NCBI RefSeq assembly: GCF_902713615.1
Contig: NC_052167.1
Location: 3,286,001 to 3,350,000, forward strand
DNA from: Scyliorhinus canicula
Taxonomy: Eukaryota
Direction of reading: 5' to 3'
Length of the DNA stretch: 64,000 bases
Program-made: the position numbers and the translations under genes
In this document: positions 22,690 through 62,997 of the stretch, piece after piece
Position numbering within the stretch: position 1 is the first letter of the stretch
How the letters are laid out: every line of letters begins with the position of its first letter
Notes under the pieces: model-generated
Told to the model about the DNA's origin: nothing
The model's input: the letters and a program-made list of their open reading frames with translations, nothing else
Databases searched by the model: none

Positions 22690-23620
22690 ACAAAAGTTAA
22701 GAGGTTATGCATCCTTTATATAGAGCATTGGTGAGACCACATCTGGAGTACGGTGTACAGTACTGGTCTCCTTATAAGGATATAAATGCTGTGGAAGCAG
22801 TTCAGTGGCGGTCTACTAGACTAATACCAGAATGGGGTGGGCTGTCTTATAAGGAATGTTTGGACAGGATAGGCGTGTATCCACTGGAGTTTAGAAAAGT
22901 AAAAGGGGACTTGATTGAAATGTAATTTGGCGGCACGGTAGCACAATGGGTAGCTTCACTGTTGCTTCACAGCTCCAAGGTCCCAGGTTTGATTCCTGGC
23001 TTGGGTCATTGTCTGTGCGGAGTCTGTATGTTCTCCCCGTGTCTGCGTGGGTTTCCTCCGGGTGCTCCGGTTTCCACCCACAAGTCCTGGAAGATGTGCT
23101 GTTCGGTGAATTGGACATTCTGAATTCTCCCTCGGTGTACCCGAACATGTGCTGGAATGTGGCGACTAGGGGATTTTCACAGTAACTTCATTGCAGTGTT
23201 AATGTAAGTCTACTTGTGACAATAAAGGTTATTATTAAAGGTCCTGAGGGGTATTGACAGAATAGATGTGAAAAGGATGTTTACTCTTGTGGGAGAATCT
23301 AGAACAAGGGGGTCACTATTTACAAAAGGGGTCGCCCATTTAAGAGCGAGATGAGAATTTATTTCTCGGAGGGTCCTGAGTCTTTCTCTGAGGGTCCTGG
23401 AACTCTCTTCCTTGGGTGCTCGTTTCGGCTGCACATATACTAAAATTGGAACGATGCAGAGAAGATTAGCGTGGACCCTACACAAGGATGACACGGAACT
23501 CTCTTCCTCGGAAGGCGAGGGAAGCAGAGTCTTTGAATATTTAAAGACAGAGCTAGATCGATTCTTGATAGGCAAGGGGGTGAAGGGTTAGATTTCATAG
23601 AATTTACCGTGCAGAAGGAG
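22690..23620 (+). mobile_element. CR1 3' fragment carrying a nested V-SINE (tail type C, 22929-23236) and a U6 retrocopy
   Basis: ORF remnant LYRALVRPHLEYGVQYWSPY..GDLIE matches CR1 ORF2; the fragment resumes after each insert. Confidence 0.8.
23416..23495 (+). pseudogene. RNU6: 3'-truncated U6 snRNA retropseudogene (U6 nt 1-80)
   Basis: gtgctcgtttcggctgcacatatactaaaattggaacgatgcagagaagattagcgtggaccctacacaaggatgacacg; 16-bp TSD gaactctcttcctYgg (23400-23415 / 23496-23511). Confidence 0.92.
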
Positions 23621-24265
23621 GCCATTTGGCCCATCGAGTCTGCACCGGCCCTTGGAAAGACCACCCCACCCAAGCCCACACCCCCACCCTATCCCAGTAA
23701 CCCCACTTAACCTTTTTGGACACTTAAGGACAATTCATCATGGCCAATTCACAATTTATCATGTGCCAACCTGCACATCTTTGGACTGTGGGAGGAAACC
23801 CACGCAGACACGGGGAAAACGTGCAGACTCCGCACGGACAGTGACCCAAACCGGGAATTGAACCTGGGACCCTGGAGCTGAAATGCAATTGTGCTAACCA
23901 CTGTGCTACCGTTCTGCCCTCACGGAGGTAGGTGGGGATGTGTTGTTGAGGTTACAATATGATCAGCCAGGGCATATTCCTTTTTTAAAAAATATTTTTA
24001 TTAAAGTTTTTACATTTTCTACACTCTGCATTCGTTAAATATAGATACAACGGTTACAATTTACAAGTTGTTCCTTTTCGGTGTGTCACTTGGCCTCACC
24101 TCTCTTACCTGGCCATATTTCTGAGGACTCTATAGCCTTTAATTAGTCTGAAGATATGGTGAAGTATGTAGTGCGAACCGTGTTTACATTGTTCTTTAGG
24201 CCAGCAGAGCTTGTACTGTGCTTTACCCACCCCTGGCTGCACACTCCTGGTGAGGATAAGATAAA

Positions 24266-24377: not shown

Positions 24378-25255
24378 GTATTTATGAACACAGACTATCA
24401 CTCCATTGTCTTAAACATTGTCAGAAGGCAAAGTTCTAGTGCTTTTTCCAGTGAAAGAATATGTAATCATATTGTAATCTAATTGTTTATATATTCATTA
24501 ATGATATAATTAATGCCTGGAAGTCAAATTATACTTTCACATGTCCATGTGGAGTTTGTTTTTAAAAATTTAATGTACCCAATTCATTTTTTTCCAATTA
24601 AGGGGCAATTTAACATGGCCAATCCATCTACCCTGCACATCTTTGGGTTGTGGGGGCGAAACCCATGCAGACACGGGGAGAATGTGCAAACTCCACATGA
24701 ACAGTGACCCAGAGCTGGGATCAAACCTGGGACCTTTGTGCCGTGAAGCTGCAGTGCTAACCACTGCGCCACCATGCTGCCCCTTTTGTTTTCCATGTGG
24801 AGTTTTCACATTCTCCCCGTGTCTGCATGGGCCTTGCCCCACAACCCAAAGATGCGCAGGAAAGGTTTATTGGCCACGCTAAATTGCTCTTTCATTGGGA
24901 AATAAGAATTGGGTACTCTAAATTCATTTTTTTTTTAAATGTTAGTTTCATGATACTTGCAGGGTGGCACTGTGGTTAACACTGCTGCCTCACAGCACTG
25001 AGGACCCGGGTTCGATCCTGGCCCCGGGTCACTGTCCTTGTGGAGTTTGCACATTCTCCCCGTGTCTGCGTGGGTTTTGTCCCCACAACCCAAAAATGTG
25101 CAGGGTAGGTGGATTGGCCACACTAAATTGCCCCTTAATTGGGGGGGAAAAAGAATTAGGTACTCTAAATTTAAAGAAATGAAATTGTAAAAAGTACTCT
25201 AAATTTAAAGAAATGAAATTGTAAAAAGTTGAGGCCCCAGCACAGCCCAGCCCCA

Positions 25256-37200: not shown

Positions 37201-38312
37201 ACAAACACTGATCGTCCACCAGTCAGCTTATAAACTCACAGCAAGACAAGAAACATTTTTTTGAAAGCTGATTTAATCCAGCAGGTCCTTACCCACTTTG
37301 ACTGAAATGCTGAGTGATCCATTTGCGAGAGACTGGAAACTGATCCTTCCCAAATTTATATTTAGCATTGAACAGTTTTAAATAGAAGATGCAAGTTAAG
37401 TGTTAGATTGGTGAGGTTACCTGTACAAACTGAGCACAGCCTCCTTACATTTCAGCAGTGGGTAAACATCAACTCCTCTCATTTCTAGACAAGTACGGGT
37501 TATTACAAGTTAGTTCTCTTCAATGGAAGTGGAGCGGCTTTATAAAGAAGTCAAAATTTCCTTCACTAAACCAACAATTGTTTAAGTTTCTAAAGTGAGG
37601 TTGATTTGCCGGATAAAATCCATCATTTTTCTTTTTAAATTTATTTACATTCATTTTTTCCAATGAAAATGAAATGAAATGAAAAAATGAAATGAAGGGG
37701 CAATTTAGCGTGGCCAATCCACCAGGGATAGCAGGGACGATAGTGACGTTTAAGGGGCACCTTGACAAATACATGAATAGGATGGGAATAGAGGGATACG
37801 GACCCCGGAAGTGTAGAACATTTTAGTTTAGACGGGCAACATGGTCGGCGCAGGCTTGGAGGGCCGAAGGGCCTGTTCCTGTGCTGTACTTTTCTTTGTT
37901 CTTTGTACCCTGCACATCTTTGGATTGTGGGGGCGAAACCCACATAAACACGGGGAGAATGTGTAAACTCCACGCGGACAGTGACCCAGAGCCGGGATTG
38001 ACCCGGGACCTTGGTGCCGTGAGGCTGCAGGGCTAACCCACTGCGCCACCGTGCTGCCCTGCTAAAATCCATCATAAATGGTTAACATTATGTATTATTT
38101 TCTTTTCTTTGGTATGTTTGGGTGTGCCCTTCTCTTCTGGGGCTGGTTTAGCTCACTCGGCTAAATCGCTGGCTTTGAAAGCAGGCCAGCAGCACGGTTC
38201 GATTCCCGTACCAGCATCCCCGAACAGGCGCCGGAATGTGGTAACTAGGGGCTTTTCACAGTAACTTAATTGAAGCCTACTCGTGACAAGCAATTTTCTT
38301 TTTTTCTTCGTA

Positions 38313-38843: not shown

Positions 38844-41800
38844 GGACTTCCGGTGGCGGCTATGAAGGAGTAATTCGCACATTTGGTGGCTCCTGCTCGG
38901 GTCGGACTTTTGGACCTTTTCCCCCGATTTTCTACCAGACTTTAACTGTAAAACTGAAGACAGAGGCAATTGTGTACTGAATTCCCACATCGGTGCATGG
39001 AGAGAAGGACTGGAAGTGCTCGTAAAGGCAGAAACAGAAAGACAGAGAAGGCTTGGGCTGAAGCTGCAGCAGGAGACAGCATGGCAAAGGACCGAATCTC
39101 TGGTTTGTCGACCCAGCGGTCAATGGAGCAGCTGATGCAAGTCATTCAGGAAGGCTTGAGCGGCTGGAGCTTAGATTGGACGCCCACGATCGGGCGATCC
39201 AGACGGTGGAGAAGACGCTGGCTGAGCAGGAGGAACATCAAACAACGGTGAAGTTGGAGGTGGGGATGCTGAGAGACCAGCAGAAGAAGCTCCTGGAGAA
39301 GGTGGAGGACCTAGAGAATAGGTCCCACCGGCAGAACTTGAAAATTGTTTTGCTCCCGGGGGGGTCTGAAGGAGCAGGCGCTGGGACATATATCGCAGAT
39401 AGGTTTGAGTAGCTGCTAGGGGATGGGACATTCTCCCGACCCTTGGAGGTGGACAGGGCTCACCAAGCACTCGCGAGGAAGCCGCGAATGGGAGACCCCT
39501 CGAGGGCAATGGTGGTGAGACGCCATAGGTACTTGGATAAGGAGCGCTTTCTACAGTGGGCCAAGCAGACACGGAGCTGTAAGTGGGACAATAGTATCCT
39601 GCGGGTTTACCAAGACCTGAGTGTGGAGGTGGCCAGGAGAAGAGCGGGCTTCAACCAGATTAGGTCAGTCCTTTTTAATAAAAAGGTGAAGTTCGGACTG
39701 TTGGATCCGACCCGTCTCTGGGTCATGTACGAAGAACAGCACTTTTATTTCGAGTCGGCTGAGGACACGCTGGACTTTGTGAAAAGGAAAGGACTGGTGG
39801 TGGACTGAGAACTTTTGAACTTTGCTGCAGCGTTCATAGTTTTTTTTTCTCTTTTGGTTTCTCTTTTTGGTTAGCTCACTCGGCTAAATCGCTGGCTTTT
39901 CAAGCAGGCCAGCAGCACGGTTCGATTCCCGTACCAGCCTCCCCGGGCAGGCACCGGAATGTGGCGACTAGGGGCTTTTCACAGTAACTTCATTGAAGCC
40001 TACTCGTGACAATAAGCAATTTTCATTTCATTTCATTTCTGTTCTTTTTTTAAAAAGTTTTTCGTTTTGTGGAAGCTGTTTGTAATGCCTTCTGTATTGA
40101 TTTGGGACCAGTGGCAGAGCTGAGTGAGTTAAGGTTTTCATTTGCACTGTTGGGGCTGGCGGTGCGCTTGTTTAGATTTTGGTGTTTTTCTGTTGGGAAC
40201 TGTGTGGGGATAACGGGGGAAATTTCAGCTGCGGTGGTCTGGGATGCACTGAAGGCGGTGGTTAGAGGGGAGCTGATCTCGATACGGGCACACAGGGAGA
40301 AGGTAGATAGGGCAAAGACGGACCGACTGATTAAGGAGATACTACAGATCGATAGGAGGTATGCTGAGACCCCAGAGGCAGGGCTTTTAAGAGAACGGCG
40401 GAGGCTACAGGCGGAGTTTGGCTGTTAACCACAGGGAGGGCGGTGGAGCAGCAGAGAAAGGCGAGTGGGGGGAACCTATGAGTGTGGAGAGAAGGCCAGC
40501 AGAATGCTTGCACAGCAGCTTAGAAAGAGGGAGGCAGCCAGAGAGATAGGGAAAGTAAATGACGGAGATGGGAACCTGGTTGGAGAATCAGTGGGGTGAA
40601 TAAGGCGTTTAGGTATTTCTACAGTAGGCTGTATAGGTCAAAACCCCCAACGGGGCCGGAGGGAATGAGGCACTTCTTGGGGGGGGCTGAATTTCCCAAA
40701 GTGGACGGGGAGCTGGTAGAAGGGCTGGGGGCCCCGATCGGGTTGGAAGAGATAGTGGAGGGTCTGAAGGCCATACAGGCGGGTAAAGCCCCGGGGCTGG
40801 ACGGGTACCCAGTGGAGTTTTATAAAAGGTTCTCTGGGATATTGGGGCCGGTGTTGATGAGGATGTTCAATGAGGATAGGGAGAGAGGGGTGCTGCCCCC
40901 AGCAATGTCACAGGTCACGATTTCACTGATTCTGAAGCGGGACAAGAACCCGGAACTGTGTGGGTACTACAGGCCGATATCCCTGATCAATGTGGATGCC
41001 AAATTGCTGGCCAAAATTTTGTCCTCAAGGATTGAGGATTGTGTTCCGGACGTTATTGGTGAGGACCAGACGGGGTGTTAAGGGTAGGCAGTTGGTGGCC
41101 AATGTAAGAAGGCTGTTAAATATGATCATGATGCCCCCGGAAGGTAGGGAGGTGGAGGTAGTGATCGCAATGGATGCAGAAAAGACTTTTGATCGGGTGG
41201 AATGGGATTATCTGTGGGAGGTACTGGGACGGTTCGGATTTGGGCGGGGCTTTATTGACTGGGTCAGGTTACTGTATCAGGCTCCTGTGGCAAGTGTACG
41301 GACGAAAAGGGCAACATCGGACTATTTTAGACTGCACCGGGGGACCAGACAGGGATGCCCTCTCCCCACTGTTGTTTGCGCTAGTTATAGAGCCGTTGGC
41401 AATTGCTCTGAGAGCCTCAAGGGGCTGGAGGGGGCTAGTCTGGGGTGGGGGGGGAGCACAGAGTCTCGCTCTATGCAGACGACCTGCTTCTGTATGTATC
41501 GGACCCATTAGAGGGGATGGAAGAAATCATGAGGATTCGAGGGGAATTTGGCTGGTTTTCGGGGTATAAGCTAAATATGGGGAAAAGTGAAATGTTTGCG
41601 ATCCAGGCAAGGGGATAGGAGAGGCGATTGGGGGAGCTGCCGTTTAGATTAGTAGGGGAATGCTTTAGGAACCTAGGCATTCAGGTGGTGCGGGAATGGG
41701 ACCGGCTGCATAAATTTAATCTGGCCCGGCTAGTAGACGAAATGAAGGACGATTTTCGGAGGTGGGACGCGCTCCCGTTGACATTAGCTGGGAGGGTGCA

Positions 41801-43310
41801 GACGGTGAAGATGATGGTCCTCCAAAGATTCCTGTTTGTGTTTCAATGTCTCTCCATCTTTATTCCGCGGTTCTTTTTAAAACGGGTCAACAAAGTGATC
41901 TCTGGTTTTGATTGGGCGGGCAAGACCCTGCGGGTAAGGACAGTAATGCTTGAGCGGAGTCGGGGAGAGGGCGTGCTGGCGCTGCAAAATTTTAGTAACT
42001 GTTACTGGGCTGCGAATATAGCCATGATCAGGAAGTGGGTGGTGGGGGAGGGGTCGGCATGGGAGCGTATGGAGGCGGCTTCGTGCAAGGGGGCGTTGGT
42101 AGTCTGGGGGCGTTGGTAACTGCGTCTCTGCCGTTCCCACCAGCACAGTACTTCACCAGTCCTGTGGTGATGGCGACCCTGAGAGTTTGGGGGCAATGGA
42201 GGAGACATGTGGGAGCAGAGGGAGCATCGGTCTGGTCCCCAATCTGTAATAATCACCGGTTTGCCCCGGGAAGTATGGCAGTGGGGTTCCGGATATGGCG
42301 GAGAGCAGGGATTGAGAGGATGGGGGATATGTTTATAGAGGGGAGCTTTCCGAGTATGAGGGCGCTGGAGGAGAAGTTTGGGTTGGCGAGGGGAAACAAA
42401 TTCAGGTATCTGCAGGTGCGGGACTTCCTACGTAAACAGGTGTCAACCTTCCCGCTCCTACCGCTAAGGGGGATTCGGGACAGGGTAATTTCCAGAGGGT
42501 GGGGAGGAGAAGGGAGCGTCTCTGACATTTACACGGAACTTATGGGGTCAGAGGAGACGCAGATCGAGGAGCTGAAGCGCAAGTGGGAGGAGAGATAGAG
42601 GATGGTCCATGGGTGGATACGTTGAGTAGAGTCAACGCGTCCGCAACATTTGCCAGGCTCAGCCTAATACAATTTAAGGTCGTTCATCGGGCTCACATGA
42701 CAGTGGCCCGGATAAGCAGATTCTTTGGGGTGGAAGACAGGTGTGCAAAATGTGCGGGAGGACCAGCGAACCATGTCCACATGTTCTGGACATGTCCGAA
42801 GCTTAGGGGATTCTGGCAGGGGTTTGCAGATGTCATGTCCACGGTGTTAAAAACAAGGGTGGCGCTGAGTCCAGAGGTGGCGATTTTCAGGATGTCGGTA
42901 GACCCGGGAATCCGGGAGGAGAAATAGGCAGACGTTCTGGCCTTTGCTTCCCTGGTAACCCGGAGACGGATACTATTAGCTTGGAGGGACTCAAAGCCCC
43001 CGAAGTCGGAGACCTGGCTATCGGACATGGCTAGCTTTCTCTGTTTGGAGAAAATCAAGTTCGCCTTGAGAGGGTCAATGTTAGGGTTCACCCGGAGGTG
43101 GCAGCCGTTCGTTGACTTCATCGTGGAAAATTAATCGTCAGCAGAAGGTGGGGGGGGGGGGGGTTTAGTTTAGCTTAGAGTAGGGGGTTAATAAAGGTGG
43201 GACCTGTAAGGGAGGGAGACGGCATTTGCACTATGTTTATAGATTCATGTACATTGTTTATTTTGTTGTTGCTATAATACCAAAAATACTTCAATAAAAT
43301 GTTTATTTAA
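38844..43310 (+). mobile_element. L1-clade LINE with intact 5' end, frameshifted ORF1 (38997-39808) and an ORF2 lacking the endonuclease (~40210-43133)
   Basis: GGACTTCCGG 5' end; ORF1 motifs DLENRSHRQNLKI and YQDLSVEVARRR; ORF2 motifs KAPGLDG, YRPISLINVDAK, GTRQGCPLSP, YADD (41472) and CxxC..H..C; AATAAA at 43293. Confidence 0.9.
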
Positions 43311-43311
43311 A

Positions 43312-43698
43312 AGGTGGTAACCGTTTGTCGACTTCTTCGCAGAAAATTAATCGTCATGGTGGGGGGGGGGGTTAGTTTAGCTTAGAGTAGGGGGTTAATA
43401 AAGGTGGGATCTGGGTCACTGTCCGTGTGGAGTTTGCACATTCTCCCCGTGTCTGCGTGGGTTTCACCCCCACAACCCAAAGATGTGCAGGGTAGGCGGA
43501 TTGGCCACGCTAAATTGCCCCTTAATTGGAAAAAATAATTGGGTATTCTAAATTTTTAAAAAATAAATAAATAAAGGTGGGACCTGTAAGGGAGGAAGAC
43601 GGGTTTTGCACTATGTTTATAGTTTCATGTACATTGTTTATTGTGTTGTTGTCATAATGCCAAAAAATACCGCAATAAAATGTGTATTTAAAAAAAAA
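43312..43698 (+). mobile_element. Second, diverged L1 3' end directly after the first, carrying a nested A-tailed V-SINE (43410-43569)
   Basis: Repeats 43097-43310 with many substitutions; SINE flanked by 13-bp TSD aataaaggtggga; AATAAA at 43674 and an A tail. Confidence 0.85.
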
Positions 43699-44765
43699 CA
43701 TTTGTGCCACACATGTTCCAGGAAATGAGCATCTCCCAACAAGAGAAAGCCTGACCTCCTCCCCTTGATGTTCACTGGCATTGCTATTGTTGAATCTCCC
43801 ACCCTGGGCATTCTAGAGGTCATCATTGACCAGACATTTTTTGAACCAGCCGTCTAAATGCAAAAGTAGATCGGCGGCTGTGCGTTCTGCAAGTGAGGCT
43901 CCGCCGCTGTAACGGCTCTGTGGGTGTATCTGCACCACACAGACAGCAGTGGTTCAAGAAGGCGACTCCCCACCACCTCCTCAGGGCCAACCCTAGGCAA
44001 TAAATATCAACCCTGCCAATGACACCCACATCCTGTGAATGAGTTTTAAAAGGTGACTCCCGAGTGTTATTTTGGATTCAGAGAGTCGATCTGTATTGTG
44101 AGGTATGGGTATTAATACCACTGTGGAAGTAACCCGTGTTGTCCAAGATTATTTCTCCTCTGTAGTGTTGATGCATTCCCAAAGACTTACGCACATAGTC
44201 TAGGCTCCTCTGAAGTATCTTTAACCTTCAGGTCAAACGGTAAATTGAGGCCTTGCTTCGAGTGTTTTTAGGAGGTTTCTTTTATTAATAAATTTAGAGT
44301 ACCCAATTCATTTTTTTTTCCAATTAAGGGGCAATTTAGCATGGCCAATCCACCTACCCCGCACATCTTTGGGTTGTGGGGGCGAAGCCCACGCAAACAC
44401 GGGGAGAATGTGCAAACTCCACACACAGTTTTTTAGCAGGTTTTGACGATCTTGTGTCACTATTCAATTTCTTTCAACGCTGGTTATCAATCCTCACCCA
44501 CCCAATACCAAAAACGAAACCCTGGTCATTTAATGCATTTAAGTGAGATTTTCAATGCAAGGTTTTTAACGTGGCGAGTGCTGTTGAGATTGAATTGGGC
44601 AATCAATTGGAAAATGGACAGGCCACACTAATGCATCCACTGCAATTGAGACTCGGGGTTGGGATACTCAACGCAATGCAGAGACATCTCTATGCTATAA
44701 CTGAGCAGAGAATGCTTCATGGTTCTAGTAGGAGATACTGAATTTCAGCCTTTCCTTGTTTCCAG

Positions 44766-44944: not shown

Positions 44945-45609
44945 GTACGTTACCGAGGCTGGGGACAAAGTATTGCGGTACCTCCAATCCCAGGTGAGTT
45001 GGGTTGAGGAAAGGACATGGGCTTGATGAACCAGGCTGATCTCTTCAAGAAATAGATATTCCTGGTAGGCTCCACAGCCATCCATTTGAATACCAGGTGG
45101 CTGAAGGTACTTTAAAAAGAACCAGCATCGACACTGATCGCAGGATTTCCTGCACTGATTCATAGCCGACAAAGTACTTTGAAGCAAAAGCAAAATGCTG
45201 GAAATTTGAAATAAAAACAGAAAATGTTGGAGTCACTCGGCAGGTCAGGCAGCATCTGTGGAAACAAAAACATAATTAACGTTTGGGTCTACAAGCTTTC
45301 AACGTTACATTCCAGTATTTGCGGTATTTAGTTTGCACATTCTCCCCGTGTCTGCGTGGGTTTCGCCCCCACAACCCAAAAATATGCAGAGTAGGTGGAT
45401 TGGCCACGCTAAATTGCCCCTTAATTGGAAAAAATAATTGGGTAATCTAAATTAAAAAAATAAGTATTTGCGGTATTTTGCGTTTGTCACTACTGCGGTA
45501 AAGGAAATGTGGCCACAAATGTGCGCAGCAAGCCCCCAAAAACAGCACACTCATGATTAGAAGGAAAGCCAGCCATTGACCAGGGGCATGAAACAAGAAG
45601 GTAACAATT

Positions 45610-46085
45610 TCCCTGGAGGGGGTGCAGAGGAGATTCACCAGGATGTTTCCTGGGATGGAACATTTCAATTATGAAGAGAGGTTGGATCGGCTTGGGTTGG
45701 AGCAGAGAAGACTGAGGGGGGCGACCTGATTGAGGTGTGTAAGATTCTGAGGGGCATGGGCAGGTTGGATAGGGAGCAGCTGGTCCCCTTAGTTGAAGGG
45801 TCAGTCACTAGGGGGCACAAGTTCAAGGTGAGGGGCGGGAGGTTTAGGGGGGTTTTGAGGAAAAGCTTGTTTTTACTCACAGGGTGGCGACGGTCTGGAA
45901 CGCACTGTCTTGGAGGGTGGTAGAGGTGGGCTGCCGCACATCCTTTAAAAAGTACCTGGATAAGCACTTGCCACGTCATAACATTCAAGGCTATGGGCCA
46001 AGTGCTGGCAAATGGGATTAGGTATGCAGGTCAGGTGTTTTTTTGCATGTCGGTGCAGGCTCGATGGGCCAAAGGGCCTCTTCTG
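45610..46085 (+). mobile_element. CR1 3' fragment
   Basis: gagggggtgcagaggagattcaccaggatg..ILRGMGRLDREQLVPLVEGSVTRGHKFKVRGGRFRG plus tail gatgggccaaagggcctcttctg. Confidence 0.75.
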
Positions 46086-49000
46086 CAGAGATTCTCTGAC
46101 CCCAATAGTCTGGAAATCTGCATTAGCTGATATAGGCACGAGGGTTTTTCAGAGGTGGGCTTGGAGATAATTAAACGTGGCAGCCATTTTCCAAACTACT
46201 CGTGAGCCACACCAGGGGCAATCTGTCAGTATGGCCAATTAACAACAGGCTATGACACAATTATACTGAAGCATATCGAGAGAGACATGAACATTTTGTA
46301 CGCCGGCATCAAATATGCAAATTATTACAAACGATCAAAGTTTTCATTGATCAAAAGAGCAATGTAGCTAATTAGGTCAAGGCACTGATCCAGTTCGATC
46401 CTTTGATTCTGCCGAAATAATGTAATCTTTATGAAGCATGCACTGCAAACTCCTCCACGGTTTGCAAAATTGATTTGGACATGCCCCGAGGCCGTTCCAT
46501 TGATGCCATGCCAGCCAAATTCACAAGAGGCCCGCATCTTATGTTGTGCCGACAGAAATGATCAGGGCTACCGCGCTCGAGGTCCCATTGCAGGCTGGTG
46601 CTCCTTGTGTCAGCATCCTAATTGCAAGTCCAAACTTGTATCACAAATGCTGAATGAAGAAAACCAGGGCACTTTGGAGGAACAAGCAACATCCACGGCA
46701 AACTGGGCCCTTGGCAGGTCCTTAAGAAGGTCTCTGAGGGGGTCCGGAGTGTTTGACTTGCACCTACCTCATTGCAAATTTTATTTTACTGACGTTATTT
46801 TTCTTGAACTAATGCGTTTCTGCAGCACGAACATGGTTTTAATATCCGGCTAGCTGAAACCATATTTCAGAAATGAAGACAGTAGTGCATCAATATTTCA
46901 AAGAGGCCATTACGCAGCAATGTTCGGGAAACATTGATCTAAAGAGGTGATTGGGATCAGTGGCAAAATAATTGCAACGCATTCACTGAATGAGGAAAGA
47001 GAGCAAACTTCAAAAATACCGCTGTTTTTTGGGAAGGAATTCTGTGTTTTAATTTGACCTCTTGGGGATAGACAAATGGGCTCTCGCTTGCTTTTTCTTC
47101 CTCTCTCTTTGTTTCTGTTTCCTGGTCTTCCATCACCTCTGCAAATCTCTCTCCCCCCCCCCCATCCCCCTCCCCACCCGCAAACCTCTCTTTTCCATCT
47201 CCTTTTGTCTTGTAATAATTTTTATTATCGTCACAAAAGTTCAGTTTTGTCTGGGCCAGACCCACTCTTACCCATTGAAGTAGGTTTTCCTCCACGCGGC
47301 TCACATTAGCACTGCAATGAAGTTACTGTGAAAAACCCCTCGTCGCCACATTCCGGCGCCTGTTCGGGTACACTGAGGGAGAATTCAGAATATCCAATTC
47401 ACCTAACATGAAAGTCTTTCAGGACTTTTGGGAGGACACGGGAGAACCCGGAGGAAACACACGGGGAGAAGGTGCAGACTCCGCACAGTGACCCAAGCCA
47501 GGAATATGTTCTCACAGTTTAAATCCATCCAAAGCAGGAAAAGATGTGGCATTTCCTTATTGGTTCAAACATTGTGGCTCTCGATAGCTAGGCCTGGACT
47601 ATTGTAAATAACCGTCTGCTCTGGGATCTGGTGATTGGCTAAATGGCAGAATCTCCTGGAGGCTTGCTTCACTGTTCTATTCTATTGCTGTTGCTGCCGC
47701 AATAAGCTTTACAGCCCACACTCCATGTACACTATGGATGGACAACTGATTTTAAAAAAAGGTTTCTCATACTTCCTGTATCATTGACTGGACATTAATT
47801 TTTTTTAGTCAGTTAATTGATTACTTCACTACCTCACAAAGCCCATTAACACTCTGGGTCACTGTCCGTGTGGAGTTTGCACATTCTCCCCTTGCCTGCA
47901 TGGGTCTCACCCCTCACAACCCAAAGATGTGTAGGGTAGGTGGATTGGCCACGTAAAATTGCCCCTTTAATTGGGAAAAAAAAAACAAAGGCCATTAACC
48001 ATCAGTATTAATACTGGGCACTGATGAAGAACTCGGTGTTAACGTTACGTTAATTGTATTATTACGGGTAGGGATAAGCAAATGGAGGGTATTGACTGAT
48101 TAAGTATCTTGAGCACATATAAAGAAGGACTGCTTGCCATGGCATTCTGGCCCTTATTGTGGGGGGGGGGGGGGGGTCTCGCTGCATGATCGTCCCCCTT
48201 TTCCACTGGGAATACGGTGTGGAGGGTGTTGCATGCATCAGGCCCGTGCAACAAAAGACTAAGTTGTTTTGTGGATTCCCAGGTCACTCGTCTTTCCCGC
48301 CACCTTGAGGAGTCCATGTTTCACCTTTACATAGTTTTTGTGAGGTTGCGACCCCCTTTTTAATTCATTGAGGGGCCGCTGCTCAGGTTCTGGCTGCTGC
48401 ACTTCAGCTCCTGATCTTTGGCCACCTGGTGCGGTGGATGGCAGGCAGCATGGAGGACCTCCAGGTAAGCCTGTTCCCGGACCTGACCGCTAACAGGTCC
48501 AGGCAGCAGGCGGTTGAGGGGGCATTCGGCCTGACTACCCTCTCACGCGGCTACATTTGCATCCAGGTGTCCTGGAGAGGGAGCACTCGGTGTCCATTGG
48601 CACGCCTGAACCCCACCATGACCAATGGATGCTGCTGGGGCTGAAGTGCATCACCAACCTCAGGAATGACATCTCAAATCAATTTGATCGGTTTTGCTTT
48701 GCAGTTTTGTTTTAGTTGCTGTGCCCTTTGAGGGGGCTGCTTACTTGATCATTTGTCCATTTGTTTTAATTGATATTTTTCAGTTGAGTATAATGAAGGA
48801 CTGCGAAGCACTGAGTGTGTTAGTAAATAGGAGGCAGGCACAAATAACGCTGCAGTCCAAAAATAAAAGCACTATCAAGGAAAGGATTAGCGCCTACTTT
48901 CAAACATCTGACTTGGGATGTAATCATCACTCTGAATTGAATTAATTTGGACAGCATGGTGGCACAGTGGTTAGCACTGCTTCCTCACGCGCCGAGGTCC

Positions 49001-49600
49001 CAGGTTTGATCCCTGCTCTGGGTCACTGTCCGTGTGGAGTTTGCACATTCTCCCCGTGTTTGCGTGGGTTTCGCCCCCCACGACCCAAAGATGTGCAAGC
49101 TAGGTGGATTGGTCATGCTAAATTGCCCCTTGATTGGAAAAAAAATGAATTGAGTACTCTAAATTTATTAAAAAATAAATTTTTAAAAAAAGAATTGAAT
49201 GAAGTCAACCCATGAGTTTCACGATGCAGTTAGTAATTTGTACACAGGAGCTTTCTTCAAGAGAAAGACTTGCATTTATGTAGCGCCTCCCACACCTGGA
49301 CATCCCAAGCCTTTTACAGCAAATAATGTACTTTTGAAGAATGGTCACTGATGTCATGTGGGGAAGGGGGTGAGATTGCAGCAACGTTCCAGATAACAAT
49401 AACAGCTCAACCTGACTCTGCCATTGGCAGCACCTTCTGAAACATTGATCCACTTTCTGCTTTGTAATCGTTCCTAGATGCCGGCTATTGCCTATGCGGC
49501 AGACCTCAGTCCCTCCTTCCTAGTTTGTATCCTTGCCCAGAGGGATGGAACAACGCGACAATTCAGCTTCTTGTTTTTTTTGTCCCTTTTTCTCTTCCAG

Positions 49601-51685: not shown

Positions 51686-54637
51686 GTTATCACATCACTC
51701 CCGCATCAAGTCCGAATCATCCCCTCACTCGCACAGTGATGAGGCATCTTTACCGCTCGGCACAAGGCTTCGAGTTGGCAGCAGATGGAACCGGATCCAG
51801 GGGGAGGTGAAGTGGTTTGGAGATCGCCACTTCCTTGTTAAACGCTGAAGGGCCACAGCCGGAGGTTCATCGTTAATGCTGATCTCGAGCAGGGAATCAA
51901 TCTCTTCGGTCTCCATTTCGGATTCCGAATCTTCATTGTGGGAGGGGAACGACTCTCGTGTCCCCCATAGGCTGAGCCCCCTTGCCCGAGGTAGTCTCAA
52001 CGAGTGTTAAGGACATGGTCTCTGCTGAAATTGTCGTCGCTGGAGTACGTTCCCTGCTTCTCAGGTGGTCCAGGTGTTTTTTCACGGCCTTCCCTTGGAT
52101 GTTGAGTTTGGAAGAAACCAGTCTTTCCCAGCGAGACTGCTTGGCATCCAATGGGAACCATCTCCAAGGTTCCGCACATAGACAGCACCTCCTGTTCTGA
52201 AGATCCTTCCAGGTCTTCTGGTGTCATAGTTCCTTTTTTTGGGTCTCCTGTTTTGACTCCACCTCCCCTCCCAAGTTGGGAAATAGCAACCGAGTCTGGT
52301 GCGCCACATGGTTCTATAGTCAAAGAGGAACCAATCCAATTCCGCATCCAGGAAACCAGCCGGCTGTTTCTTCAATCTGCTTTTCAATGTTTGAACTGCT
52401 GTTTGGCCAGGCCAATAGACGATGAATAGTACGCCGGCACGGCACCGTTCGGATGTGTTCAATGCCGTTCGCCTTCATGAATGCCTGAAATTCTTCACTG
52501 GTAAAGGAGGTCCCATTGGATATGAGGATCTCTGATATGTCGTGTGTACAGAAACTTTGCCAGAGTTTCTTTATTGTGTGAGAAGTCATGGAGGACATAC
52601 GTACTTGTACTTCTAACCATTTCGAAAGGTCATCGATCCCAGGAACAGGCCAGCAAAGTCCATGTGTACCTGTACCCATTGTCTACCTGGGCATTCCCAT
52701 GGGGGAATTCTGGTTCTCCTGGCACAAGGAGCACAATTTCACCAGATTCTCAATGTCTGTATCGAGCACGGGCCACCAGATGTAGCTCCTTTCGAGCTTT
52801 TCCATCTTGGACACCCCGGGGTGTCCATTGCGCAGTTCCGTCAACATTGGGTGCCGACCTGGGTGGGGGGGTGGTGAATACTCGGGCCCCCACAGGATGA
52901 TGCCACCTTCTACAGTCAGCTCTTGTCATTCAGTGAGAAGGGCTTCATGTCATCGAATTCTGCCACTGAGGATCATGTGGAGCAATTTTGCCAATGTGGG
53001 ATCCGTCTGAGCCCACATTTCAATCTGGTTCAGGGCAAGGTATCCAGCGAGTTCTTCCAATGCCAGCAGAGGGCCCAAGCTTGTGGGCAGCAGGTGGCGA
53101 CTCATGCCATCCGTATGGCAATGTGCATTCCTGGGCAATACTCGAGAAAGTATTCGCAGGCCGCTAACAATAATGCCCAACGTATAATTCAAGCCGAGGC
53201 AATGGGGGGAATCGCTTTATCCTCTTTAAAAAAGGCCAGCATGGATTTATGGGCTGTTAAGATTGTGAAATGTCTGCTGTAGATGTGGGTGGAATTTCTC
53301 CACCTCAAAAATAACAGCTTTTTCAATCTGAGAATAACATCTTACCGCATCCGAAAAGGTTATCTCGGTGCCATTGACCCATCTGGACCCTCTGGAGCCA
53401 GACTCTGCCCAAGTGTCTGGGTCCTGGTCCTCGTACAACTATGAGTGGGAGTCGGCCATCTGCTTCACAGATGTAACCGGTGTCATGATGGTCCCCATAC
53501 AGTGGTTAGAGCTGTTGCTTCACAGCGCCAGGGTCCCAGGTTCAATTCCCACATAAGTCCCTGTCTGGGTGGAATCTGCGTTTTCTCCCCATGTCTGCGT
53601 GGGTTTCCTCCGGGTGCTCCTGTTTCCTCCCACAAGTCCCGAAAGACGTGCTTGTTAGGTGAATTGGACATTCTGAGTTCTCCCTCTGTGTACCTGAACA
53701 GGCGCCAGAGTGTTTCGACTCGGGACTTTTCGCAGTAACTTCATTGCAGTGTTAATGTAAGCCTACTTGTGACACTAATAAAGATTATTATTAATCTTCA
53801 ACGGTTCCCCTGTGTATGTGGCCAACCCGGCTCTGGTGTTTCGCAGGTCTGAGGGCAAGATGCCCATCCGGAAATGTCAGAAGGTCTGTTCCCTGACGTT
53901 GGAGACTGCGGTATCCACCTCCATTTCTAGGGAGCAAGACTGTTCTCTTTATCAGGGCAATCTAAGAGGTGTAGCTGGAATTTAGTGGCAGCATTTCGTC
54001 TTCTAAGGGCTGTTGGATAAGGCTCGAGCCTGAGGTGGCTTTAGCTTCTGGCCTGGGCAGCACGTGTACTGCTGACTCTTGCAGCCTTGCCCGGGCCGAT
54101 CCTTCGGCGAACACTTGTAGTCCTCCGGGGACTTCCTTGGTTCCTCTAGGGTTATCCGACCGTCTTTTGAGAATCCAGAATGTCCTGGCTGAATCTTGAG
54201 TTGGTGGTGGGTGAGGCACATGGAGCCTTTACTGGGAAAGTTGGACTTACCGTACGAGCGCCCACCCGTCACGGGTTTCCCGGGGTCCTCCCAGCCGTGT
54301 TGAATTGATAATGCTGGAGGGTTACGGATGGCTTTGGGTCAGAATGCTTCTTTACTACTTCCACAGACTCATTGAATGTTTTTGTGTCAGGGGCTGCAGG
54401 AAAAGTTAAATTCTTAGTAATGCTGAATGTCGGGGCCTTGCATGCTGTCAAAACGATTACTTTATGCCGATGCTATTGATGGGGACGAAGTAGCACAAGC
54501 GTTCAGCATACTGGGGCCAGTCCTCCACGTCCGCATCATAAGACTCTAGCTTCCCAAACAAAGGCATTTCTGGATTTTACTTTCTGCTTTGTTTCTTACC
54601 AGCGTTGTCGTCAGGGAGTTTTGAAAAAGCTGCTGAG

Positions 54638-54865
54638 GGGCGGCACGGTGGCGCAGTGGGTTAGCCCTGCAGCCTCACGGTGCCAAGGTCCCAGGTTCCA
54701 TCCCGCCTCTGGGTCACTGTCCGTGTGGAGTTTGCACGTTCTCCCCGTGTTTGCGTGGGTTTCACCCTCGCAACCCAAAGATGTGCAGGTTAGGCAGATT
54801 GACCACGCTAAATTGCCCCTTAATTGGGAAAAATGATTTGGGTACTCTAAATTTATTAAAAAAAA
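54638..54865 (+). mobile_element. A-tailed V-SINE subfamily (type D); representative of many copies (e.g. ~6982, 24570, 24961, 31680, 44280, 45330, 47851, 48948, 62590)
   Basis: Shortened V-domain (gggtttcaccctcgcaacccaaag); tail aattgccccttaattgg(A)n..gggtactctaaattt(A)n; 15-bp TSD gaaaaRgctgctgag. Confidence 0.85.
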
Positions 54866-57696
54866 GAAAAGGCTGCTGAGAATCCTGTGTTCGATTCGCG
54901 TTGCCAGTGTAATAATTCCAGGAGGTGCCGAAAGGCCAAATTGGTCTATTTTTTAGCTGAAAGGAATGGTGCACACAAAACAAACATCTGAGCCCAGGAC
55001 TACCGGGAACAGCTACATTCATAGGTCCTGCTAACGAACCCCAGCTGGGCAGGCCGCCGCCTACTCACCACATGAACTCCTACGAAGCCCATGGGGAGAT
55101 CAATCAATCATCCCCCATGGTTCTCGTGAGGGTTATCTCACCCCCTTTCTCTTCAATCTGCTTTGGGTCTGTTGGGACTAAGATGCATGGTGACGAGTCA
55201 ATAGGCAAATTCCTTTGAAAATGAGAGAATAATGTTGAACAATTCAGGGTGATGACAATCCACATTTCTGCAAAGGCTGAATTCATTACAGGGGGTGTGC
55301 ATAGCTTCATATCGATGTTTTTCAAACTCTTCCGTTTGCGGACTCACCTGAAAATATCAGTGATGTCCCAGGTGCCCAGTGTAAGTATGAAGCCACTCGC
55401 AGGGACCCAGAGCACGTGAGTCCGCTGGGGCACTCCTGCGGTATAACGTGTCCTTACAGCAACAGCACTGCTAAGAGATTGATTTCCCCTTTAAAGCAGG
55501 GATGATTACACCAGGGCTGCCTTAAGCCAGGAACAAATTGGGGCTTTGTTTTGCAAGGAAAGAAAGACTGATTATTCAACAAAGGAGATTTGTGCACGCA
55601 GTACGGATGAGCTGCTTGCTGGTCACACTCGTGATAGGTTTTACAGAATCTTAGTTTGCAAACCTCCATTAATCCTCCAAACTGGAGAGCTTTACAGATT
55701 CTCGGTGCGAAGGTAACACAAAATACATTATTAGCGTAACTCGGGGGAATTGTTTTGAAAAAGTTATGCATTTTAGTTAATTGCAGACATTAAAAAAATG
55801 CAAAAGAATCTGTCTTCTCACAGATGCTATTCGGCATGGTGCATGTTTTAGGCTTTTTTAGATTTCCAGCATTCACAAGTTGTTTTAAATCTGGATAGAT
55901 TATTTACCTCTGCCCACTCCCTTCACAAATCCTTCAAAATCATTGTCTTTATGGTTATCCTCACCTTCCTCTTCCTTCCAAACTCTCTCTTCCCTTGACC
56001 TCTTGTGCGCAATCTCTTCCTTCCTTTGTCCCAGCCTACCCGGTGGCCATCTCCTCGACCATTAGGCCGCATGGTCTGAATTCTCTCCTAGAACCCCTCT
56101 GCTTCTCCACCTCCTTCTCCTTGACGTCCCGACATTAAACCAGGCTTTTTGGGCCAATCCACTCCCTCTCTCTTTTTTAACCTCCTTCAGCCCCCGACAA
56201 CCCTCCCCAGACCTCTGATTCTCACCTTCTGTATGTGCCTGATTTTCACTATTGGGTGGCTAAGCTTTCAGCTCCGATGGTACTGAGCTCTGGAATCCCC
56301 TTCCTAAACCACTCCATCCCTCTTCCTCTTCTCCTTTAAGATATTCCTTGAAACCTACTTCTTTGACCAAGGTTTAATTCATGTGTCCTAATATCTCCCC
56401 ATGTGGCTGGATTTCAAATTTTGTCCACTAATTCTTCTGTGAAGTGCCTCGGAATGTTTTACAATATTAAAGACTAGATGAACACTAGCTGCTGCTGAGA
56501 CAGCAGGTGGAGGGGCTCTAGATTTCTTAAGACGTGGAACCCACAGCCTTCCCCGATGCCCGAAGGCAAGATGGGGGGGTGAAGAAATTTGTCCTGCCAC
56601 AAATTCTGTGATTTGTGTTGAGGGAATGGTTAAAATCTGGTCTTGCAGCCAGTCGCTGGGGGGGTAGTGGATGAACCAACATCCTGTTTTACATTTGACC
56701 AGAGGGCATATGGTTTCATAGAATTCCTACAGTGCAGAAGGAGGCCATTTGGTCCATCGAGTCAGCATTGACCCTCTGAAAGAGCAACCAACCTAGGCCC
56801 ACTCCCCCGCCCTATTCCCATGACCCCATAACCCCACCTGACCTACACATCTTTGGACATTATGGGGCAATTTAGAATGGCCAATCCACCAGACCTGCAC
56901 ATCTTTGGACTGTGGAAGGAAACCAAAGCACCCAGAGGAAACCAACGTAGACCCGGGGAGAAAACGGAAACTTCAAGGCTGAAATTGAACCCAGGTCCCT
57001 GGCACTGTGAGGCAGCAGTGCTAACCACTGCCACAGTGCCGTCCCTGTGACACAGGAGTAACGGGTTCTGCAAGGGGTTATATGATTAGGAGGTGGTGAA
57101 GGAGATTGTAAGAGGGTGAGGCTTGGGTTCTATATCCAGCCGAGCTGTTGGCAGGGGATTAGTAAACTATTTCTTTATCCAGGCTGGATCGTCTACGTTT
57201 TGCTTGGGGGAGTCAGGAAGGGAAGAGGAATCTACAGCATATTTTGATGAAGGGGCATAACTATTTCCAAATCGCGTGTTGCGTTTAGGTCTTTACAGTG
57301 CTATTGAGGAACTTGTCCTACATTCATCCTCGTGTTTCTGTTGCATATTCACTACTCTCTGTTGTGCGAACGGTAATAAAGCAACAAAGCCTGCTGAGAG
57401 TCACCAGAGGGCATGAATATAAATGAGTGCCAATGTATTCAGTCTCCTGCTTGAGTAAACAGTTTTAAATAGTTTCTTTCCAAGGCCAGTGAAAGATTGG
57501 AACAGTATCTCTCAGGAGATTATGACGCACTCTTAAATTGATGTTTGTTAGGCAAGCATCGTGTGGTTTACATGATGAGCACTAACGAGAAGTAAAGTAA
57601 TTAATGTTAATCGTGCAGTAGGTTAAGCACAGTTCCACCTGTTTCTCATTTATTTGCCTCCATAGAATTAAGGAAATGCTTCACAATATTTTAAGA

Positions 57697-61630: not shown

Positions 61631-62997
61631 AATTCATGATGTGCACTTATGATCTTGCACGTTTTTAGAAAAACTGTTTTAGAACATAGAACAGTACAGC
61701 ACAGAACAGGCCCTTCGGCCCTCAATGTTGTGCCGAGAATTGATCACCCTACTCAAACCCACCCTATACCCGTAACCCAACAACCCCCCCCCCCCCCCCC
61801 TTAACCTTACTTTTATTAGGACACTACGGGCAATTTATCACGGCCAATCCACCTAACCTGCACATCTTTGGACTGTGGGAGGAAACCGGAGCACCCGGAG
61901 GAAACCCACACACACAGGGGGAGGACGATCAGACTCCACACAGACAGTGACCCAGCCAGGAATCGAACCTGGGACCCTGGAGCTGTGAAGCATTTATGCT
62001 AACCACCATGCTACCGTGCTGCCCCCAACGTGGGTCACGTGGGTTTTGAGGGTCACATTTTTAAAATTCCTTTGATTGAGTTTAAAGATGTTCTCAAATT
62101 GGCTCCAGACTACCCGACAGAAGTGTAGATTTCAATCCTCTTTCTCTTACCTCCCGAGGAGACCAGGATGCATTCCTCAGACATATATACACGTAAAATC
62201 TAACGAGTGCTCTGAAAGAGTGAACAAAAACTCATAGACTTGATGGCTTTTCCACAAAAGATGCAAACTGATAAGGCACCAAAATGTGTGAACAGCCCAT
62301 GACCCTTTTCATCACTAGGTAAAGAGATTTTGGATGACTAATGAAATTCCCACTTGCCTAGAAAGTGACTCAGCATTGTTGTATAGGTCACATGATAATG
62401 GTGGCCACCTTGTCTTAACCTGCACATCTTTGGGTTGTGGGGGTGAGACCCACGCAGACACGGGGAGAATGTGCAAACTCCACACGGACAGTGACCCCGG
62501 GGCAGGGATCGAACCCAGGTCCTCAGAGCCGTGAGGCAGCAGTGCTAACCACTGCACTACCGTGCAGGCCTGCACTGAATTTGGATTATTAATTTTTAAT
62601 TTTAAAAATAAATTTAGAGCACCCAATTTTGTTTTTCCAATTAAGGGGCAATTTAGCGTGGTCAATCCACCTAACCTGCACATCTTTTGGTTGTGGGGGT
62701 GAAACCCACGCAAACACGGGGCGAATGTGCAAACCCTACATGGACAGTGACCCAGAGCCGGGATTCGAACCCGGGTCCTCAACGCCGCAGTCCCAGTGCT
62801 AACCACTGCGCCACGTGCCGCCCCTAAATTTGGATTATCCATGATTTATATTTGTAGGTGTTGTTTTATCTTCATTTGTAACTAATCTTTGTTTGTATCT
62901 GTTAGTAACATTATCGTTTCTAAAGTAGCTTGTGTGAAATTAACTAACTTTTTCCTTTTCAAGGAAAAAAAGCTTTACCGCTGGGTTAGTTTAAATT

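What the first reader, a model, noticed from the sequence alone, without database searches (positions are those of the whole stretch)
54623..54880. A V-SINE subfamily that appears to have switched from CR1 to L1 as its mobilising partner
Seen in sequence: many V-SINE copies share a shortened V-domain and end in aattgccccttaattgg(A)n..gggtactctaaattt(A)n, with no CR1-like tail. These copies carry long TSDs: gaaaaRgctgctgag (54623/54866), aataaaggtggga (43397/43570), agtatttgcggtattt (45314/45463), acaaagSccattaac (47836/47985) and aatttggattat (62578/62827). Several are 5'-truncated, and some sit at TT|RAAA-like sites. Established: elasmobranch HE1 V-SINEs share their 3' end with a CR1-type LINE (HER1), whereas A-tails, ~15-bp TSDs and TT/AAAA targeting are L1 hallmarks. 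An L1-clade element is present at 38844. Inference: this subfamily dropped the CR1 tail and now uses L1 machinery, Alu-style.
Basis: partly seen in the sequence, partly recalled or inferred. Interest (0 to 1): 0.72.

Follow-up and report, generated by a model that had tools for sequence, protein, structure and literature searches.

The report
Shark V-SINE subfamily with L1-style insertions
A branch of the common shark V-SINE has lost its CR1-type tail, ends in an A-rich tail and sits between 12-16 bp target duplications, so an L1-type enzyme probably copies it; this is a new shark example of a known SINE habit, not a new mechanism.

Summary
The window holds about 39 V-SINE (HE1-like) copies. 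Eighteen form one subfamily ("D") with an ~18-nt deletion in the V-domain, no CR1 hairpin or ATTCTATG repeat, and a tail of internal A-run, a 20-nt module and an A/T-rich end. All five quoted TSDs are correct.

- **TSDs:** 9 of 16 assessable D copies have flank matches above the 95th percentile of mismatched-flank controls (12-16 bp). None of 13 copies with other tails does. Age-matched, the count is 9/14 against 0/5.
- **Target sites:** T-rich at -3 to -1 and A-rich at +1 to +4, which is L1-like. They lack the RTE "Tn-TA" signature.
- **Empty site:** a paralogous L1 3'UTR copy confirms one 13-bp duplication.
- **Short copy:** one TSD-flanked copy ends at the internal A-run.
- **Tail origin:** the tail matches no LINE end in the window, including the L1 3' ends.

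L1-type, A-tail-dependent mobilisation is therefore the best reading (about 0.55) but is unproven. An unidentified partner sharing the 20-nt module remains possible.

Partner switching by SINEs is well known. The scan has also noted this subfamily several times on other pieces of this genome. Interest is modest.

The parts
54638..54865 (+). Full-length D-type V-SINE (the reported copy). It has a tRNA-like head with A and B boxes, a shortened V-domain, an internal A-run, the 20-nt module and an ATT(A)8 end. It is flanked by 15-bp TSDs at 54623-54637 and 54866-54880.
43410..43569 (+). 5'-truncated D copy (starts at element position 72) inside the 3'UTR of a truncated L1. 13-bp TSD at 43397-43409 / 43570-43582. 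The neighbouring L1 3'UTR paralogue (about 43166-43222) carries the same site uninterrupted and with a single copy of the 13 bp.
45330..45462 (+). 5'-truncated D copy with a perfect 16-bp TSD (45314-45329 / 45463-45478).
47852..47984 (+). 5'-truncated D copy that ends at the internal A-run and lacks the 20-nt module. 15-bp TSD at 47836-47850 / 47985-47999.
62590..62826 (-). Full-length D copy with a 12-bp TSD (62578-62589 / 62827-62838). ARAGORN reads its head as tRNA-like (62749-62828).
44279..44429 (-). 5'-truncated D copy with a 14-15 bp TSD, 1 mismatch (44430-44443 / 44265-44278). It is the only exact match to the 20-nt module.
37627..38062 (-). D copy split by a later CR1-like LINE 3' fragment (about 37720-37905). 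13-bp TSD at 38063-38075 / 37614-37626.
24558..24791 (-). Full-length D copy inserted into an older 5'-truncated D copy (24792-24925, +). 14-bp TSD at 24792-24805 / 24544-24557. Eight extra bases lie between the 5' TSD and the SINE head.
48949..49191 (+). Full-length D copy. TSD core of 9 bp, 12 of 15 matching (48934-48948 / 49192-49206).
9179..9391 (+). D copy with an internal deletion. Its TSD of about 15 bp is interrupted by a 2-nt indel (9163-9178 / 9392-9405).
6981..7200 (+). D copy without a recognisable TSD. The D copies at 2788-2998 (-), 12276-12490 (+), 14222-14340 (+), 24959-25175 (+), 31680-31902 (-, 7-bp match only) and 62416-62565 (-, 3' part lost) are in the same state.
38844..43312 (+). 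Defective L1-clade LINE. ORF1-like region, then another SINE inserted at about 39865-40040, then the ORF2 RT and C-terminal Cys motif with frameshifts and stops. The endonuclease part is missing. It is followed by a second, 5'-truncated L1 3' end (43312-43698) that ends in A9.
23596..23920 (-). Example of the CR1-tailed parent type (HE1-like). It has the full V-domain, a strong 3' hairpin and an ATTCTATG-type end, and no TSD. Others: 2149-2472, 10286-10620, 22154-22499 and 56714-57045 (all -).

Best explanation
The D copies are a derived subfamily of the elasmobranch HE1-type V-SINE. It keeps the pol III tRNA-like head and most of the V-domain. It has lost the last ~130 nt that carry the CR1-type hairpin and ATTCTATG repeat. 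Its RNA instead ends in an A-rich tail. The most likely mechanism is Alu-style. Pol III transcribes the element. An L1-clade ORF2 protein nicks a T-rich|A-rich target, primes reverse transcription on the terminal A-run, and makes the second nick 12-16 bp away, which creates the TSD. Reverse transcription often stops early, which gives 5'-truncated copies. Shown here: the structure, monophyly and derived state of the subfamily; the TSDs and their absence in CR1-tailed copies; the target bias; and the lack of any LINE end in the window that shares the tail. Inferred: that the enzyme is L1's, and that recognition needs only the A-run.
For: Structure:
- Consensus alignment shows D = HE1 with an ~18-nt V-domain deletion, shared sequence up to ...CTAAATTGCCCCTTAA, then its own tail.
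- CR1-tailed copies fold into a conserved hairpin before the ATTCTATG repeat (about -20 to -22 kcal/mol, z down to -2.8). D tails fold no better than shuffles (z about 0).

TSDs:
- 9 of 16 D copies score above the 95th percentile of mismatched-flank controls and 4 score above the control maximum. For copies with other tails the count is 0 of 13. Mann-Whitney D against non-D gives p 0.002.
- Restricted to copies with K2P <= 0.11, the count is 9/14 against 0/5 (Fisher p 0.022).
- A paralogous L1 3'UTR gives the empty site for the 43410 copy.
- In all 11 TSD-bearing copies an A-run directly abuts the 3' TSD.
- Copy 47852 ends at the internal A-run, lacks the 20-nt module, and still has a 15-bp TSD.

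Target sites:
- A at TSD positions +1 to +4 is 28/44 against a 0.256 background (p 1e-7). A purine at +1 occurs in 10/11.
- T at -3, -2 and -1 occurs in 8, 5 and 5 of 11 copies.
- The RTE-type signature (TTT about 10 nt upstream; PMC13295347) occurs in 1/11.

Tail and context:
- All 13 module matches lie inside D copies.
- There is no significant similarity to the two L1 3' ends.
- An L1-clade element is present and of similar age.
- A U6 snRNA retropseudogene with a 17-bp TSD shows that small pol III RNAs are retroposed with long TSDs in this genome. From my own knowledge, that is an L1 trait in mammals.
Against: - No L1-mediated event is demonstrated.
- The only L1 in 64 kb is dead and lacks its endonuclease. 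L1 is rare here (two fragments) while CR1-like LINE fragments are many.
- L1's own TSD could not be established. The candidate 8-11 bp match has p 0.09, so no L1 against D logo comparison was possible.
- The tail is not a pure poly(A). It carries a conserved 20-nt module with a weak AU hairpin just before the A/T-rich end. That is what a stringent partner would recognise.
- Poly(A)-ended LINEs can be stringent (PMC3747384).
- The U6 pseudogene has a long TSD without any A tail, so long TSDs here do not strictly require A-tail priming.
- The sample is 11 target sites from one window.
Confidence: 0.55

Rival explanations
1. Stringent partner not seen in this window. A LINE that ends in an A-rich tail (an L1-lineage, I/Nimb-like or other clade) carries the same ~20-45 nt 3' module. 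It recognises that module on the D SINE in the classical shared-tail way.
For: The module is conserved in 13 of 18 copies at a fixed distance from the end. A small AU hairpin is predicted at the same place in four copies. Most non-mammalian SINE/LINE pairs are of the stringent type, and poly(A) ends do not exclude this (PMC3747384).
Against: No LINE end in the window has the module. The hairpin is no more stable than in shuffles. Copy 47852 was inserted with a TSD although it lacks the module. The module resembles the SINE's own upstream segment (15-16 of 20-21 bases; best-anywhere shuffle p 0.016), which suggests a self-duplication rather than a captured LINE end.
Confidence: 0.25
2. RTE-clade partner. 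RTE LINEs also give TSDs of about 10-15 bp and mobilise tRNA SINEs.
For: TSDs of 10 bp or more with a T|A cleavage step are described for Bov-B/RTE elements and their SINEs (PMC13295347). Two of the 11 D targets are T|A.
Against: The T-stretch about 10 nt upstream that marks RTE insertions is present in 1 of 11 copies. D copies end in A-runs, not in microsatellite-like repeats. No RTE-like ORF was seen in the window.
Confidence: 0.07
3. No separate mobilisation. The D copies are ordinary CR1-mobilised HE1 copies that lost their tails by deletion or 3' truncation, and the flank matches are chance.
For: CR1-like LINEs are the dominant LINEs in the window.
Against: Eighteen copies share the same V-domain deletion and the same new tail. 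Their flank repeats far exceed controls and abut the element ends. One empty site is directly visible.
Confidence: 0.02

Closest known systems
HE1 V-SINE of sharks and rays, partner LINE HER1 (Ogiwara et al. 1999, 2002; listed in Table 1 of PMC3747384)
   Same: tRNA-derived head with A and B boxes. V-domain core. Sequence collinear up to ...CTAAATTGCCCCTTAA.
   Different: ~18-nt deletion in the V-domain. The whole CR1-type 3' part (hairpin plus ATTCTATG repeat) is replaced by an A-run, a 20-nt module and an A/T-rich end. D copies have 12-16 bp TSDs, and the CR1-tailed copies in the window have none.
L1-dependent A-tailed SINEs of mammals (Alu, B1, B2)
   Same: Pol III head. A-rich 3' end abutting the TSD. 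TSDs of 12-16 bp. T-rich|A-rich target. No sequence shared with the L1 3' end. A-rich linker inside the element.
   Different: Found in a cartilaginous fish with a V-domain body. One third of copies are 5'-truncated. There is a conserved non-A module just before the terminal tail. No experimental evidence exists.
CORE-SINE and V-SINE tail exchange ('module exchange'): MIR/L2, MIR3/L3, Mar-1/RTE; V-SINEs with CR1, L2 or LfR1 tails (PMC3747384 Table 1; PMC5499810; PMC11481361)
   Same: One conserved body recurs with different 3' ends that fit different LINE partners. CR1-tailed, a second CR1-like-tailed, a third-tail type and D types coexist in this window.
   Different: The documented V-SINE partners in those tables are CR1, L2 or LfR1 types with a shared tail. 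Here the new end is A-rich and shares nothing with the L1 seen.
Stringent L1-clade pairs of plants and green algae (for example SINEX-3_CR / L1-1_CR; PMC3747384)
   Same: SINE and L1-clade LINE both end in poly(A).
   Different: Those pairs share about 80 nt of 3' sequence. No such sharing was found here.

Membership tests
V-SINE superfamily / HE1 family | tRNA-derived pol III head with A and B boxes | tested here: met
   The A box TGGCGCAGTGG and the B box GGTTCCATCCC are readable in 54638-54710. ARAGORN calls the head of copy 62824 tRNA-like.
V-SINE superfamily / HE1 family | Conserved central V-domain | tested here: met
   The consensus alignment to the CR1-tailed copies is collinear through the core, apart from an ~18-nt deletion.
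V-SINE superfamily / HE1 family | 3' tail shared with the CR1-type LINE HER1 (hairpin plus short repeat) | tested here: not met
   D copies lack the hairpin and repeat that the CR1-tailed copies have. D is therefore a derived subfamily, not classical HE1.
L1-dependent (relaxed, A-tail) SINEs | Terminal A-rich tail directly abutting the 3' TSD | tested here: met
   Seen in 11 of 11 TSD-bearing copies.
L1-dependent (relaxed, A-tail) SINEs | TSDs of about 7-20 bp | tested here: met
   TSDs of 12-16 bp. Nine of 16 copies are above the 95th percentile of controls. Copies with other tails: 0 of 13.
L1-dependent (relaxed, A-tail) SINEs | Cleavage at TT|AAAA-like sites | tested here: inconclusive
   T is enriched at -3 to -1 (18/33) and A at +1 to +4 (28/44, p 1e-7), but only 3 of 11 sites are TT|R and n is small.
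L1-dependent (relaxed, A-tail) SINEs | No 3' sequence shared with the partner L1 | tested here: met
   There is no significant similarity to the two L1 3' ends in the window. Other L1 families of the genome were not available.
L1-dependent (relaxed, A-tail) SINEs | Trans-mobilisation by L1 ORF2p that depends on the A tail | not testable with these tools
   Needs a cell-culture retrotransposition assay.
L1-dependent (relaxed, A-tail) SINEs | A coeval, coding-competent L1 in the same genome | tested here: inconclusive
   An L1-clade element of similar divergence is present but defective. Look-ups for further shark L1 copies found nothing usable.
Stringent SINE/LINE pair | SINE 3' module identical to a LINE 3' end | tested here: not met
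   Within the window all 13 module matches are inside D SINEs. The genome-wide test was not possible.
RTE-dependent SINEs | Tn-TA target signature and a microsatellite-like 3' end (PMC13295347) | tested here: not met
   TTT at -14 to -7 occurs in 1 of 11 copies, and the ends are A-runs.

The most novel reading that the evidence does not exclude
Relaxed, poly(A)-dependent trans-mobilisation by L1, known from mammals and flowering plants, also operates in a cartilaginous fish. It has produced an Alu-like composite V-SINE: a monomer ending in an A-linker, followed by a partial self-copy and a new A tail. That would place relaxed L1 recognition near the base of jawed vertebrates and bear on the open question of whether stringent or relaxed recognition is ancestral for the L1 clade (raised in PMC3747384).
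Probability: 0.4. Interest if true: 0.5.

Novelty: new member of a known kind. Interest (0 to 1): 0.35.

Why it matters
If L1 is the partner, sharks would give a non-mammalian case of an A-tail-dependent SINE derived from a CR1-dependent one. It coexists in the same genome with its CR1-tailed relatives. That is a natural side-by-side comparison of two LINE integration machineries acting on nearly the same RNA. It also bears on when relaxed 3'-end recognition by L1 arose. For annotation, these copies should be classed apart from CR1-tailed HE1, because their insertion signature differs. The principle that SINEs change partners by changing tails is already established.

Tried and rejected
- **Reads.** The run search found the stretch in several studies of one coded organism (A) and partly in a second (B, 0.18-0.20 of words) and a third (C, 0.08). 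I then tried to lay four runs on 43300-49250 to look for orthologous empty sites. No cross-species presence/absence data exist.
- By oversight the whole-window Rfam scan included those places, and it reported nothing there. The whole-window BLAST database queried inside scripts also contained them. The D consensus was built without that copy, and its divergence was measured only on 43467-43555.
- **Metagenome scan for the 19-nt tail motif.** Nine hits, all unrelated contigs with no V-SINE upstream. These are chance matches.
- **Exact look-up of two L1 ORFs.** Not on record.
- **Word search with the L1 C-terminal piece.** One hit at 45% identity. Its contig (L010) has no shark SINE and no similarity to this L1. 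It is not usable for shark L1 3' ends.
- **Idea that the D tail is the collinear HE1 body, 3'-truncated.** The alignment score is no better than shuffles (p 0.62). Rejected.
- **Idea that the D tail mimics the L1 3' end (both end in TTTATT(T)AAAA).** Not significant.
- **L1's own TSD.** The best flank match is 8 bp (p 0.09). Not established.
- **Ogiwara et al. 2002 (PMC155270).** Not held in the library.


Full report
**What is there**

The window is shark-like DNA, very rich in tRNA-derived V-SINEs. BLAST of the reported copy (54637-54865) against the window gives 39 hits. Reading each hit with its downstream sequence sorts them by 3' end:

- a CR1-tailed type ending in ...GGGCCGAATGGCCTCCTTCTGCACTGTA plus ATTCTATG-like repeats;
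- a second CR1-like tail (...GGGCCGAAGGGCCTGTTCTGTGCTGTA...);
- a third tail shared with another SINE family;

Eighteen copies are type D:

- minus strand: 2998, 24783, 31901, 38059 (split), 44429, 62565 and 62824;
- plus strand: 6981, 9195, 12283, 14222, 24792, 24959, 43410, 45330, 47852, 48954 and 54637.

A multiple alignment and a consensus-to-consensus alignment with the CR1-tailed copies show three things:

- D is collinear with the HE1-like type through the head and the V-domain.
- D has an ~18-nt deletion in the V-domain.
- D diverges after ...CTAAATTGCCCCTTAA into its own tail: TTGG, an A-run of 5-9, the module GAATTGGGTACTCTAAATTT, and an A/T-rich end that finishes in an A-run.

The module occurs 13 times at up to 3 mismatches (0 expected), always inside D copies. 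Because the deletion and the tail are shared, D is one derived subfamily and not a set of damaged copies.

**The observation**

I defined element ends from coordinates where similarity among copies stops. I then scored the best ungapped match between the 30 nt upstream and the 50 nt downstream of each copy, using the flanks of different copies as controls.

| Set | Above 95th percentile of controls | Other results |
|---|---|---|
| D copies (16 assessable) | 9 | 4 above the control maximum; two more (9195, 12283) have indel-interrupted matches |
| Copies with other tails (13) | 0 | No different from their controls (p 0.62) |

D against non-D gives p 0.002.

Age does not explain the difference. 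K2P to the in-window consensus is 0.03-0.16 for D (median 0.095) and 0.07-0.24 for CR1-tailed copies (median 0.123). Among copies at or below 0.11, the TSD count is 9/14 against 0/5 (p 0.022).

TSD lengths are 12, 13, 13, 14, 14-15, 15, 15, 15 (12 of 15 matching) and 16 bp.

For copy 43410 a natural control exists. It sits in the 3'UTR of a truncated L1. The adjacent L1's 3'UTR carries the same sequence uninterrupted, with the 13 bp present once.

**Target and ends**

- In all 11 copies with a recognisable TSD, an A-run directly precedes the 3' TSD.
- The first four TSD bases are A in 28 of 44 positions against a background of 0.256 (p 1e-7). This remains so when the first base is dropped (20/33).
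- Ten of 11 TSDs start with a purine.
- T occupies positions -3, -2 and -1 in 8, 5 and 5 of 11 copies.

This is a loose TTT|RAAA pattern, as expected for an L1-type endonuclease. It is not a strict TT|AAAA.

The signature described for RTE-clade LINEs and their SINEs is a T-stretch about one helical turn upstream plus T|A (PMC13295347). It is present in 1 of 11 copies.

Six of the 18 copies are 5'-truncated, with starts clustered at element positions 71-102.

**The tail**

- CR1-tailed copies fold into a long conserved hairpin just before the repeat (-20 to -22 kcal/mol; z down to -2.8). D tails fold no better than shuffled sequence. They show only a weak AU hairpin over the module.
- The D tail is not significantly similar to the collinear part of the HE1 body (p 0.62).
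- The module's best match anywhere in the SINE is the element's own segment GGATTGGCCAYGCTAAATTG, about 45 nt upstream (15-16 of 20-21 bases; shuffle p 0.016). This suggests a composite: a monomer ending in an A-run, followed by a short self-copy and a new A tail, rather as in dimeric Alu. This is an inference from one modest statistic.
- Copy 47852 ends at the internal A-run, lacks the module, and still has a 15-bp TSD. Either reverse transcription was primed on the internal A-run, or monomer-type sources existed. Both fit priming on an A-run better than recognition of the module.
- The two L1 3' ends in the window show no significant similarity to the tail.

**The candidate partner**

The element at 38844-43312 is L1-clade. 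An RT piece matches human L1 ORF2p at E 2e-24, against R2 at 1e-3. The L1-type C-terminal Cys-His motif and an ORF1-like region can be read in the translation. The element is defective: it has stops and frameshifts, lacks the endonuclease region, and carries another SINE inside it.

A second, 5'-truncated L1 3' end follows directly and ends in A9. Its divergence from the first (10-16%) is in the range of the D copies. Its own TSD could not be shown.

By protein search no other L1 is in the window, whereas CR1-like LINE fragments are numerous. These include a copy with an esterase-type ORF1, endonuclease and RT at 26168-29716. A CR1-like LINE 3' fragment is inserted into D copy 38059. CR1-type activity therefore went on after D insertions, and the 'switch' is a branching, not a succession.

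**Context**

Rfam found one match, a U6 snRNA pseudogene at 23416-23498. It is 3'-truncated at about position 81 and has no A tail. It is flanked by a 17-bp duplication with one mismatch (23399-23415 / 23495-23511). It sits inside a CR1-like LINE fragment whose paralogues carry that site once.

From my own knowledge, TSD-flanked snRNA pseudogenes in mammals are attributed to L1. This copy shows that the genome retroposes small pol III RNAs with long TSDs. It also shows that such TSDs can arise without an A tail, which cuts both ways for the argument.

**Comparison with what is known**

- HE1 of sharks and rays is listed with the LINE HER1 as partner. V-SINEs elsewhere are listed with CR1-, L2- or LfR1-type tails (PMC3747384, Table 1).
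- Exchange of tails to change partner is an established model (PMC5499810, PMC11481361).
- The same review warns that a poly(A) end does not prove relaxed recognition, because some L1-clade and R1-clade LINEs are stringent.
- I found no paper in the searchable library describing an A-tailed or L1-type V-SINE in cartilaginous fish. Repeat libraries could not be consulted.
- The scan itself has noted this subfamily repeatedly on other pieces of this genome, with the same tentative reading.

**Limits**

No orthologous empty sites could be examined. My handling of those places afterwards, including the oversight, is set out under Tried and rejected.
- The metagenome scan for the tail motif gave only chance hits.
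- Protein routes to further shark L1 copies failed.
- The key refutation test, whether some LINE in the genome shares the tail, was therefore run only within 64 kb.

**Verdict**

| Reading | Confidence |
|---|---|
| L1-type, A-tail-dependent mobilisation | about 0.55 |
| Unidentified partner sharing the module | about 0.25 |
| RTE partner | about 0.07 |
| Chance or decay | about 0.02 |

This is a new member of a known kind. Interest is modest.

Noticed in passing
window 23399-23511: U6 snRNA retropseudogene (Rfam RF00026, 65.8 bits, model positions 1-81 of 105). It is 3'-truncated and has no A tail. It is flanked by a 17-bp TSD, ggaactctcttcctYgg, and sits inside a CR1-like LINE 3' fragment whose paralogues carry the site once. 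A further ~20-nt direct repeat lies just upstream (about 23363-23405).
   Followed up: partly
window 43120-43700: Two L1 3' ends lie in tandem. The full element ends at 43312 in TTTAAAA. It is followed at once by a 5'-truncated copy of the last ~220 nt (84-90% identical) that ends in A9. This could be a nested insertion or a template jump. A possible outer TSD, aacatttg (38807-38814 / 43697-43704), is not significant.
   Followed up: partly
window 26168-29716 (-): CR1/L2-like LINE with a GDSL-esterase-type ORF1 (214 aa), endonuclease plus the start of RT in a 549-aa ORF, and a 267-aa C-terminal ORF. A V-SINE with the second CR1-like tail starts about 37 nt after its stop codon (26131-25855).
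   Followed up: partly
window 37720-37905 and 17130-17199: 5'-truncated CR1-like LINE 3' ends (tail ...GGGCCGAAGGGCCTGTTCYGTGCTGTA) are inserted into SINE copies. One is in D copy 38059 and one in copy 17049. This gives a direct in-window SINE/LINE shared tail for the second CR1-like SINE type.
   Followed up: partly
window 24544-24805: D copy 24783 carries 8 extra bases (aaacaaaa) between its 5' TSD and the SINE head. It is inserted in the 5' end of an older truncated D copy lying head-to-head.
   Followed up: no
window 25160-25235: Tandem duplication of about 34 nt that includes the end of the D module (gtactctaaattt aaagaaatgaaattgtaaaaa, twice), behind D copy 24959.
   Followed up: no
window 38140-38303, 39865-40040, 18711-18885, 36561-36712: A second tRNA-SINE family. 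ARAGORN calls its heads tRNA-Ser- or tRNA-Leu-like. Its tail (...GGCGACTAGGGGCTTTTCACAGTAACTTCATTG...) is also found on some V-SINE copies (22929, 47495, 53500). One copy sits inside the L1 between ORF1 and ORF2.
   Followed up: no
D copies 43410, 47852, 44429, 24792, 45330, 14222: 5' truncation points of D copies cluster at element positions 71-102, just after the tRNA-like head. This could reflect a reverse-transcription stop at the structured head or a head-less source.
   Followed up: no
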